A stretch of 64,000 bases of DNA from Octopus sinensis (taxonomy: Eukaryota), in assembly GCF_006345805.1 (NCBI RefSeq), contig NC_043012.1:36084001-36148000 (forward strand). Reading direction: 5' to 3'. Below the pieces are notes generated by a model, which was given only the letters and a program-made list of their open reading frames with translations, was not told where the DNA came from and made no database searches. Of the stretch, positions 53,161 to 53,546 are shown piece after piece. Made by a program: the position numbers and the translations under genes. Numbering within the stretch: the first letter of the stretch is position 1; every line of letters starts with the position of its first letter.

Positions 53161-53546
53161 TAGGCGCAGGAGTGGCTGTGTGGTAAGTAGCTTGCTTACC
53201 AACCACCATGGTTCCGGGTTCAGTCCCACTGCGTGGCACCTTGGACAAGTGTCTTCTACTATAGCCTTGGGCCGACCAAAGACTTGTGAGTGGATTTGGT
53301 AGATGTAAACTGAAAGAAGCCCGTCGTATGTCCCCCACCACCACCCCATTAAATCTGCCTAAATGTATAAATGCCAGAACTTATTTTGACAGCAAGCTTC
53401 CTGATGATTACATTTGAATGAAACAGTTCTAGTCCTGTAGAAGCTCCTTCTATAAAATAAATTAATTTACTCTGCTATGTATTGAGTACCTTATTTACTG
53501 TGGTTAACCCGACTCAACCCGGGACCAACATATATATATATATATT

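What the first reader, a model, noticed from the sequence alone, without database searches (positions are those of the whole stretch)
53330..53530. Best-preserved hammerhead, inserted in a SINE and oriented with the spondin gene
Seen: AGCTTC-CTGATGA-ttacatttgaat-GAAA-CAG-ttctagtc-CTG-TA/GAAGCT (53395-53445). All invariant core positions are present, stems I (6 bp) and III (4 bp) are perfect and able to fold as a monomer; only stem II is weak. It lies 3.2 kb upstream of exon 56674 on the same strand, so it is probably inside the preceding intron (inference). Established: intronic hammerheads can cleave pre-mRNA co-transcriptionally. Predicted cut after 53439.
Basis: partly seen in the sequence, partly recalled or inferred. 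Interest (0 to 1): 0.78.

Follow-up and report, generated by a model that had tools for sequence, protein, structure and literature searches.

The report
Hammerhead look-alike in a spondin intron
A 51-base stretch in an intron of a spondin gene carries the hammerhead ribozyme's core letters and two of its three helices, but it lacks the third helix, matches no hammerhead model and is predicted to fold differently, so it is most likely an inert look-alike.

Summary
The motif lies in about 200 bp of single-copy DNA between the two halves of a SINE. It is on the sense strand of an F-spondin-like gene whose exons I confirmed at 56674-56750, 59751-59888 and 62851-63002, inside a long upstream intron.

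The match is rarer than chance gives for one window: about 1-4e-5 expected, or about 2e-3 for a broad class of equally good variants. A 2-3 Gb genome should still hold about one to tens of such coincidences.

The ribozyme reading is not supported:
- Helix II offers only U·U, U-A, A·A, C-G, with no loop-loop contact.
- No Rfam hammerhead model matches, even at E≤10 on 81 bases.
- The hammerhead fold is about 4 kcal/mol worse than a competing hairpin, and helix III is 2-4% occupied.
- No second copy or relative was found, and conservation could not be tested.

Natural hammerheads with a 2-bp helix II or a U·U mismatch do exist, so weak activity or a decayed relic is not excluded.

Verdict: probably inert; low interest.

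The parts
53395..53445 (+). Hammerhead-like motif, 51 nt: helix I 5' strand 53395-53400, CUGAUGA 53401-53407, 'helix II' region 53408-53419, GAAA 53420-53423, helix III 53423-53426/53435-53438 with loop 53427-53434, H17 = A53439, helix I 3' strand 53440-53445
   Evidence: Sequence read. Only site passing the descriptor. No Rfam hammerhead match. Folding.
53408..53419 (+). Place where helix II should be (UUACAUUUGAAU): U10.1·U11.1 mismatch, U-A, A·A mismatch, C-G, AUUU loop; no contiguous pairs
   Evidence: n2=0. Forcing the two pairs raises the energy from -5.2 to -2.2 kcal/mol.
53331..53530 (.). About 200 bp of AT-rich DNA, single-copy within the window, that carries the motif. Its last ~17 nt (53511-53527) resemble the reverse complement of the SINE's B-box region.
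   Evidence: BLAST and nhmmer against the window find only the sequence itself.
53160..53330 (+). 5' half (tRNA-like head) of a SINE that has about 15 copies or fragments in the window
   Evidence: 82-95% identity to 44428-44595, 31951-32119, 33916-34069 and three more copies; the weaker fragments fall to about 73%. Alignment.
53531..53845 (+). (AT)n/(TG)n tract followed by the 3' half of the same SINE family
   Evidence: 88% identity to 32137-32349 and other copies.
56674..56750 (+). Spondin exon encoding the end of the Reeler domain (ATVIERADAWYKDHGGLTKVICEED), AG/GT bounded
   Evidence: tblastn 56-68% identity over 25 aa to four spondin homologues, 38-60% in four others. Profile positions 147-172, E 8e-7. 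Splice sites.
59751..59888 (+). Spondin exon encoding the linker and the start of Spond_N (…CCPCDSVTYKLIFKGLWSRRTHPKDFPT); phase fits the exons on either side
   Evidence: Profile positions 173-223, E 7e-17. Sequence and translation.
62851..63002 (+). Spondin exon covering Spond_N profile positions 21-72
   Evidence: Pfam PF06468, E 1.4e-10. 73% identity to P0004. Splice sites.
55905..56004 (.). Assembly gap of 100 N between the motif and exon 56674

Best explanation
This is a coincidental hammerhead look-alike in inert intron DNA. The 51 nt carry the hammerhead core and two flanking complementary stretches, but no helix II and no helix I-helix II tertiary contact. The RNA is transcribed as part of a long intron of an F-spondin-like gene. 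It is predicted to fold mostly into a competing imperfect hairpin that ties up core bases G8-A9 and the helix III loop. On this reading it does not self-cleave at cellular Mg2+ and is removed and degraded with the intron.

Shown: the sequence, its context, its failure against the hammerhead models, and the folding predictions. Inferred: that it does not cleave, and that its origin is chance.
For: - Helix II is absent. Only U·U, U-A, A·A and C-G are possible, and forming the two pairs costs +3 kcal/mol.
- Metazoan type I hammerheads have a 4-bp helix II whose loop contacts helix I, and a 1-2 bp helix III. Hammerheads of Penelope-like elements have a 7-8 bp helix II and no helix III (PMC4209133). 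This motif fits neither architecture.
- No hammerhead family of Rfam 15 matches at gathering score, nor at E<=10 when 901 or only 81 bases are searched.
- The hammerhead fold with helices I and III scores -5.2 kcal/mol against an MFE of -9.3. Helix III pair probability is 0.04 in the 51-mer and 0.02 with 100-nt flanks. Helix I falls to about 0.17 with those flanks. The z-score against shuffles is 0.03.
- The insert is single-copy in the window, so there is no tandem or dispersed family here.
- No relative was found in metagenome contigs.
- No paper in the library links hammerheads to octopus or cephalopods.
- Chance sites of this quality are expected about 1-70 times in a genome of about 2.7 Gb.
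- Searches with relaxed hammerhead descriptors are known to give mostly false positives (PMC6155905).
Against: - For one 64-kb window the coincidence is rare: 1-4e-5 for the exact features and about 2e-3 for the broad class.
- All 15 core positions and both other helices are perfect.
- Natural, active hammerheads exist with a helix II of only two pairs, or even one, and with a U10.1-U11.1 mismatch (PMC3088659 section 8; axolotl HHR_Amex2 in PMC7229834). The weak helix II is therefore not disqualifying on its own.
- Hammerheads are common in repeats of other molluscs, for example about 5000 copies in mussel (PMC7229834).
- The source genome could not be searched for further copies.
Confidence: 0.5

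Rival explanations
1. It is a decayed relic of a real hammerhead. On this reading the ~200-bp insert is a fragment of a hammerhead-bearing retroelement, either a non-LTR retrozyme or the terminal repeat of a Penelope-like element. The fragment landed in the SINE's (TA)n tract, and its helix II has since been destroyed by substitutions or an indel. It is now inactive or nearly so.
For: - The per-window chance expectation is low.
- The insert lies exactly at the start of a (TA)n microsatellite. Penelope-like elements show insertion bias for microsatellites, (TA)n in the Naiad clade (PMC8557442).
- Animal retrozymes are AT-rich units of 150-450 bp carrying type I hammerheads (PMC7229834).
- A 6-bp helix I is the canonical metazoan length (PMC4209133).
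Against: - Neutral decay should not place all changes in helix II while leaving about 35 constrained positions untouched. My estimate is roughly 3e-3 for four hits all falling within 12 of 51 nt.
- A helix III of 4 bp with an 8-nt loop is untypical of metazoan type I and Penelope-type hammerheads (PMC4209133).
- The insert is a single copy, not tandem.
- No canonical hammerhead is found anywhere in the 64 kb.
- The minus-strand end of the insert looks like a SINE B-box. If the insert is an antisense SINE fragment, the motif would lie on the element's antisense strand.
- Naiad elements, the clade with the reported (TA)n preference, lack canonical hammerheads and survive only as old remnants in cephalopods (PMC8557442).
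Confidence: 0.25
2. It is a genuine, at least weakly active, type I hammerhead with an unusually poor helix II (U·U, U-A, A·A, C-G). It would cleave the spondin pre-mRNA intron after A53439.
For: - The core is perfect, helix I has 6 bp and helix III has 4 bp, so it could act as a monomer.
- It lies on the sense strand inside an intron, like the amniote RECK and C10orf118 hammerheads (PMC3088659, PMC6155905).
- Natural hammerheads tolerate a 1-2 bp helix II and a U10.1-U11.1 mismatch (PMC3088659).
Against: - Hammerheads with a weak helix II normally compensate with a pseudoknot or a loop-loop contact. Such contacts are needed for activity at low Mg2+ (PMC3088659, PMC6155905). None is available here: helix I does not continue beyond 6 bp and has no internal loop.
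- A competing fold is more stable by 4 kcal/mol, and helix III is only 2-4% occupied.
- No covariance-model match.
- No evidence of conservation or of other copies.
Confidence: 0.15
3. It is a remnant of a C/D-box snoRNA: a terminal stem (AGCUU/AAGCU) bracketing a C box (UGAUGA), sitting in an intron on the sense strand.
For: When only 81 nt are searched, the only Rfam matches over the motif are C/D snoRNA families: SNORD102 at 17.1 bits (E 1.3), snoMe28S-U3344 at 15 bits and sR4 at 9.7 bits. Many animal C/D snoRNAs are intronic (general knowledge).
Against: - The scores are far below the gathering thresholds (17 against 47).
- The D-box position reads CUGU, not CUGA.
- It is only 51 nt long, with no C'/D' boxes.
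- The base before UGAUGA is C, not a purine.
Confidence: 0.02

Closest known systems
Canonical metazoan type I hammerhead ribozymes (Rfam Hammerhead_1; Schistosoma Sm-alpha, newt satellite 2, mussel and axolotl retrozymes)
   Same: Type I topology with helix I open. Identical 15-nt core, A15.1-U16.1, H17=A, a 6-bp helix I, AT-rich repeat-associated surroundings.
   Different: The known ones have a 4-bp helix II whose loop contacts a loop in helix I, a 1-2 bp helix III with a small palindromic loop, and occur in tandem units of 150-450 bp in hundreds to >100,000 copies (PMC4209133, PMC7229834). This motif has no helix II, no tertiary contact, a 4-bp helix III with an 8-nt loop, is single-copy in the window, and has no covariance-model match.
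Intronic hammerheads of amniotes (HH9 in RECK, HH10 in C10orf118/CTCL)
   Same: Sense-strand position inside an intron of a protein-coding gene, as an isolated motif rather than a tandem one.
   Different: Those are complete hammerheads with tertiary contacts or a pseudoknot, are conserved across mammals and birds, and were shown to self-cleave (PMC3088659, PMC6155905). None of these properties is shown here, and the HH9/HH10 models do not match.
Minimal hammerheads of Penelope-like elements
   Same: Association with retroelements and with microsatellite target sites. Low or no activity as single motifs.
   Different: Those have a long helix II (6-8 bp) and essentially no helix III, which is the opposite of this motif. 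They occur in the terminal repeats of an element with RT and GIY-YIG genes (PMC4209133, PMC8557442). No such element was seen next to the motif.
Natural hammerhead variants with a weak helix II, and engineered 'minizymes' without helix II
   Same: Core plus helices I and III, with helix II reduced to 1-2 pairs or starting with U10.1-U11.1 (PMC3088659; HHR_Amex2 in PMC7229834). From my own knowledge, unverified here: helix II-deleted minizymes keep a low residual activity at high Mg2+.
   Different: The natural weak-helix-II variants belong to families with many members and usually have a compensating pseudoknot. Here the two possible pairs are not even contiguous, and there is no family.

Membership tests
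Hammerhead ribozyme (type I) | Conserved core: C3 U4 G5 A6 N7 G8 A9, G12 A13 A14, A15.1-U16.1 pair, H17 (not G) at the cleavage site | tested here: met
   CUGAUGA at 53401-53407, GAAA at 53420-53423, U53438, A53439
Hammerhead ribozyme (type I) | Helix I directly flanking the core and the cleavage site | tested here: met
   AGCUUC/GAAGCU, 6 Watson-Crick pairs. Predicted occupancy is 0.7-1.0 in the isolated 51-mer but about 0.17 with 100-nt flanks.
Hammerhead ribozyme (type I) | Helix III closed by A15.1-U16.1 | tested here: inconclusive
   Four complementary pairs with an 8-nt loop exist, but the predicted pair probability is only 0.02-0.04 because a competing hairpin wins.
Hammerhead ribozyme (type I) | Helix II starting at the 10.1-11.1 pair (4 bp in canonical metazoan motifs; at least 1-2 bp in the weakest natural variants) | tested here: not met
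   UUACAUUUGAAU gives U·U, U-A, A·A, C-G. There are no contiguous pairs from the junction (n2=0), and forming the two pairs costs +3 kcal/mol.
Hammerhead ribozyme (type I) | Tertiary contact between loop 2 and a loop or bulge of helix I (or a pseudoknot), needed for activity at cellular Mg2+ | tested here: not met
   There is no structured loop 2. Helix I has no internal loop and does not continue beyond 6 bp: the next positions are A·C, C·C, G·U. A 7-nt complement to the helix II region lies 41 nt upstream, at 53361-53367, but by my rough estimate it is about as common as chance gives in AT-rich DNA (p about 0.08).
Hammerhead ribozyme (type I) | Match to the family covariance models (Rfam Hammerhead_1, _3, _II, HH9, HH10) | tested here: not met
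   No match at gathering score, nor at E<=10 in 901 nt or 81 nt.
Hammerhead ribozyme (type I) | Related copies or orthologues that keep the helices through compensatory changes | tested here: inconclusive
   No other copy in the window and none in metagenome contigs. The source genome and sister species are not in any collection available here.
Hammerhead ribozyme (type I) | Site-specific self-cleavage 3' of H17 | not testable with these tools
   Needs a transcription and cleavage assay or RNA-end mapping.
Non-LTR retrozyme / Penelope-like element hammerhead | Tandem units of 150-450 bp each carrying the ribozyme, or terminal repeats flanking RT and GIY-YIG genes | tested here: not met
   The insert is single-copy with no tandem unit. 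No hammerhead core with helices exists elsewhere in the 64 kb. ORFs next to the motif are SINE or microsatellite read-through. A systematic RT/GIY-YIG search of the window was not done.
C/D-box snoRNA | C box RUGAUGA and D box CUGA brought together by a terminal stem; length about 70-120 nt; family score | tested here: not met
   The terminal stem and UGAUGA are present, but the D-box position reads CUGU, the length is 51 nt, and the best family score is 17.1 bits against a gathering score of 47.

The most novel reading that the evidence does not exclude
A lineage-specific type I hammerhead with a near-absent helix II (U·U, U-A, A·A, C-G) that still self-cleaves, co-opted from an insertion into a SINE and sitting sense-strand in a long intron of a cephalopod-like F-spondin gene. 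It would be the first intronic hammerhead described in a mollusc and an extreme natural helix II variant.
Probability: 0.06. Interest if true: 0.7.

Novelty: not a real feature. Interest (0 to 1): 0.2.

Why it matters
If the motif really cleaved, it would extend intronic hammerheads from amniotes to an invertebrate gene. It would also show how little of helix II the ribozyme needs in nature. Both are testable with one cleavage assay.

As it stands, the case matters mainly as a calibration point. A perfect hammerhead core with two perfect helices is rare in one window but is expected a few to tens of times by chance in a multi-gigabase, AT-rich genome. Core-plus-two-helices matches should therefore not be called ribozymes without helix II, a covariance-model match, or evidence of a family or of conservation.

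A by-product is a phase-consistent three-exon model of the N-terminal part of a spondin gene on the + strand.

Tried and rejected
- Rfam at gathering score over the whole window found nothing.
- Rfam at E<=10 over the whole window produced a list swamped by microsatellite-driven sub-threshold miRNA matches. Only the best 150 of 399 were shown, so it was uninformative for hammerheads.
- Local scans of 901 and 81 nt gave no hammerhead. They did give weak C/D snoRNA look-alikes, which I rejected: the D box is wrong, the RNA is too short and the scores are far below threshold.
- I looked for the source organism and for orthologous introns. Exact look-ups of two ORFs spanning the locus found nothing on record.
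- Word-indexed protein searches with two exon peptides found no candidate.
- The profile-free search found spondins. The closest, P0004, is a metatranscriptome cDNA without introns, so it gives no genomic comparison.
- A pattern scan of metagenome contigs for relatives of the motif, with helix II and loop 3 left free, gave 0 hits.
- The other CUGAUGA…GAAA sites (6919, 23087, 29071 minus strand) share no sequence with each other or with this locus and lack helices. The apparent excess of core matches (5 against 0.81) shrinks to 4 sites against my estimate of about 1.4 expected once the overlapping match and the local GAAA frequency are counted. I do not read it as a hammerhead family.
- Dimeric readings were not convincing. 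A self-pairing AUUUGAAU and the CUAG in loop 3 exist, but the register does not place 10.1 opposite 11.1, and there is no second copy nearby.
- An 11-nt 'GTCCCCCACCA' at the left edge of the insert resembles the start of the SINE's 3' half. It is too short and C-rich to call a target-site duplication.
- Pfam on LINE-like and other ORFs gave no hit. ARAGORN found no tRNA in the SINE heads.

Full report
**1. The observation**

The sequence at 53395-53445 on the + strand reads AGCTTC-CTGATGA-TTACATTTGAAT-GAAA-CAG-TTCTAGTC-CTG-T-A-GAAGCT, exactly as reported. In hammerhead numbering this gives:
- C3-A9 = CUGAUGA and G12-A14 = GAA.
- A15.1 (53423) paired to U16.1 (53438), and H17 = A53439.
- Helix I of six Watson-Crick pairs, and helix III of four pairs with an 8-nt loop.

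The predicted cut after 53439 follows from the rules. The 12 nt where helix II belongs can form only U·U, U-A, A·A and C-G around an AUUU loop, with no contiguous pair from the junction.

**2. Is it more than chance?**

I sampled millions of contexts around the core from the window's own dinucleotide statistics.
- A site at least this good is expected 1.2e-5 to 3.8e-5 times per 64-kb window, both strands. 'This good' means CUGAUGA, GAAA 4-40 nt downstream, helix I >=6 and helix III >=4 Watson-Crick pairs, and helix II unconstrained.
- The descriptor was chosen after seeing the site, so I also scored a broader class of equal merit: N7 free, any two of the three helices summing to >=10 pairs, and three circular permutations. 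That class is expected about 1.6e-3 times per window.
- In the real window only this site passes, even with loose settings.
- The count of CTGATGA itself is as expected (9 against 9.1).

The match is therefore unusual for one window. Scaled to a genome of about 2.7 Gb (my assumption for the source), one to some tens of such coincidences are expected. I do not know how many windows the scan has read.

**3. What surrounds it**

*The SINE.* The motif lies in about 200 bp (53331-53530) that has no other copy in the window.
- To its left is the tRNA-like 5' half of a SINE (53160-53330). Six copies elsewhere in the window are 82-95% identical to it, and weaker fragments fall to about 73%.
- To its right is an (AT)n/(TG)n tract and then the 3' half of the same SINE family (to about 53845), in the same order and orientation.
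- Intact copies such as 31951-32349 have only a short microsatellite between the halves. Other copies (33916-34742, 43740-44595) also carry foreign DNA there.
- 'Inserted in a SINE' is therefore a fair description.
- The last 17 nt of the insert resemble the reverse complement of the SINE's B-box region, so the stretch may be a patchwork of repeat fragments.

*The gene.* The spondin gene is real and on the + strand.
- An exon at 62851-63002 matches Pfam Spond_N, E 1.4e-10.
- A library-wide search returned full-length spondins. tblastn with these and a profile built from them confirm two more exons. The other is 59751-59888, the start of Spond_N, E 7e-17.
- The splice sites and phases of all three exons fit each other.
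- The closest homologue is a marine metatranscriptome cDNA with Reeler, Spond_N, TSP1 and Kunitz domains.

*The intron.* The ~146 profile positions upstream of exon 56674 include the strongly conserved W-x-A-P…G-S-G-C-V-E-F stretch. They are not found anywhere in 1-56673. The motif therefore lies in a long upstream intron on the sense strand, 3.2 kb before exon 56674. A 100-N assembly gap at 55905-56004 is the only caveat.

**4. Is it a hammerhead?**

- No hammerhead family of Rfam 15 matches at gathering score.
- None matches at E<=10 when only 901 nt or only 81 nt are searched. Judged from the weakest matches listed, the hammerhead models score below roughly 8-10 bits.
- ViennaRNA gives -5.2 kcal/mol to the hammerhead fold with helices I and III. 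The minimum-energy structure scores -9.3; it is an imperfect hairpin that pairs G8-A9 and the following bases with the helix III loop.
- Helix III has a pair probability of 0.04 in the isolated 51-mer and 0.02 with 100-nt flanks. Helix I drops to about 0.17 in that context. Adding the two possible helix II pairs costs 3 kcal/mol.
- The region is no more stable than its shuffles, z = 0.03.

**5. Comparison with known hammerheads**

- Canonical metazoan type I hammerheads have a 6-bp helix I, a 4-bp helix II whose loop contacts helix I, and a 1-2 bp helix III. Hammerheads of Penelope-like elements have a 7-8 bp helix II and no helix III (PMC4209133). This motif shares only the core and helix I.
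- Loop-loop contacts are what give activity at cellular Mg2+ (PMC6155905, PMC3088659). None can be drawn here.
- Against a quick dismissal: natural hammerheads with a helix II of two pairs or even one, and with a U10.1-U11.1 mismatch, have been reported, and the mismatch retains some cleavage activity (PMC3088659 section 8). One axolotl family has U·U at the base of helix II (PMC7229834).
- Hammerheads are abundant in the repeats of other molluscs (PMC7229834). Penelope-like elements prefer microsatellite targets (PMC8557442), and the insert sits at the edge of a (TA)n tract.
- I found no paper that reports hammerheads in octopus or other cephalopods.

**6. Weighing**

Three readings remain.
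- (a) Coincidence, inert, about 0.5. It explains the missing helix II, the odd architecture, the lack of any family and the unfavourable fold. Its cost is the low per-window probability.
- (b) Decayed relic of a mobile-element hammerhead, about 0.25. It explains the rarity and the microsatellite position. But it needs all the decay to have fallen in helix II, and it needs an ancestral architecture unlike the known metazoan ones.
- (c) A weakly active or functional ribozyme, about 0.15. It needs an unsupported helix II, no tertiary contact and a disfavoured fold to suffice.

A C/D snoRNA remnant (terminal stem plus UGAUGA) is very unlikely because the D-box position reads CUGU and the RNA would be 51 nt long.

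Under (a) and (b) the outcome is the same: the sequence is spliced out with the intron and does nothing.

**7. What could not be done**

The collections at hand do not hold the source genome or its relatives. Copy number, orthologous conservation and covariation, which are the decisive computational tests, remain open, and cleavage can only be tested at the bench.

The identification of the source as an octopus-like cephalopod rests on my recollection of the SINE and the microsatellite make-up, not on a tool result.

**8. Verdict**

The ribozyme claim is not supported. This is most likely an inert hammerhead look-alike of low interest, with a small residual chance (about 6%) of an unusual intronic hammerhead that one cleavage assay would settle.

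Noticed in passing
window 55905-56004: Run of 100 N (assembly gap) inside the intron between the motif and exon 56674. Its true size is unknown, and it could hide sequence, including a small exon.
   Followed up: partly
window 56674-56750, 59751-59888, 62851-63002 (+): Three phase-consistent exons of an F-spondin-like gene (end of the Reeler domain, linker plus start of Spond_N, then Spond_N), separated by introns of about 3 kb. The upstream Reeler exons are not in the window, so the intron before 56674 is more than 56 kb long or is broken by the gap.
   Followed up: yes
window 29046-29071 (-), 6919-6950 (+), 23087-23126 (+), also 26511 (-), 48485 and 48733 (+): Other CUGANGA…GAAA core matches. 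The one at 29071(-) has a 4-bp helix II (GGUU/GACC) but no helix I. The rest lack helices. None shares sequence with the 53.4-kb locus. They look like noise.
   Followed up: partly
window 33916-34742 and 43740-44595: Other copies of the same SINE also carry foreign DNA in their central (TA)n/(TG)n tract. In the 34-kb copy it is flanked by a short inverted repeat. This suggests the SINE's microsatellite core is an insertion or rearrangement hot spot.
   Followed up: no
window 53511-53527: The right end of the unique insert matches the reverse complement of the SINE B-box region (15 of 17 nt). On the minus strand the insert ends in a G-rich (GGT)n-like run (53331-53348). It could be a truncated antisense SINE of another family.
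   Followed up: no
window 53395-53445: When only 81 nt are searched, Rfam lists weak C/D snoRNA look-alikes (SNORD102 at 17.1 bits against a gathering score of 47). The cause is the terminal stem plus UGAUGA, and the D-box position reads CUGU.
   Followed up: yes
window about 600-4300 (-): ORFs with motifs that I recall from LINE reverse transcriptases (…PGLDGLPYELY…, …FRPITLLNADLKIW…) in a GC-richer segment (51% GC). The four ORFs I scanned against Pfam (675-968, 1557-1964, 2642-2953, 3634-4218) gave no hit; the ORF carrying FRPITLLNADLKIW (1502-1810) was not scanned. The call is unverified.
   Followed up: partly
window 50800-52990 and many other places: Very long TATG/CATA-type microsatellite arrays. 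They produce hundreds of sub-threshold matches to mir-297, mir-466, mir-3149 and mir-1277 in Rfam E-value mode. These are artefacts of simple repeats.
   Followed up: no
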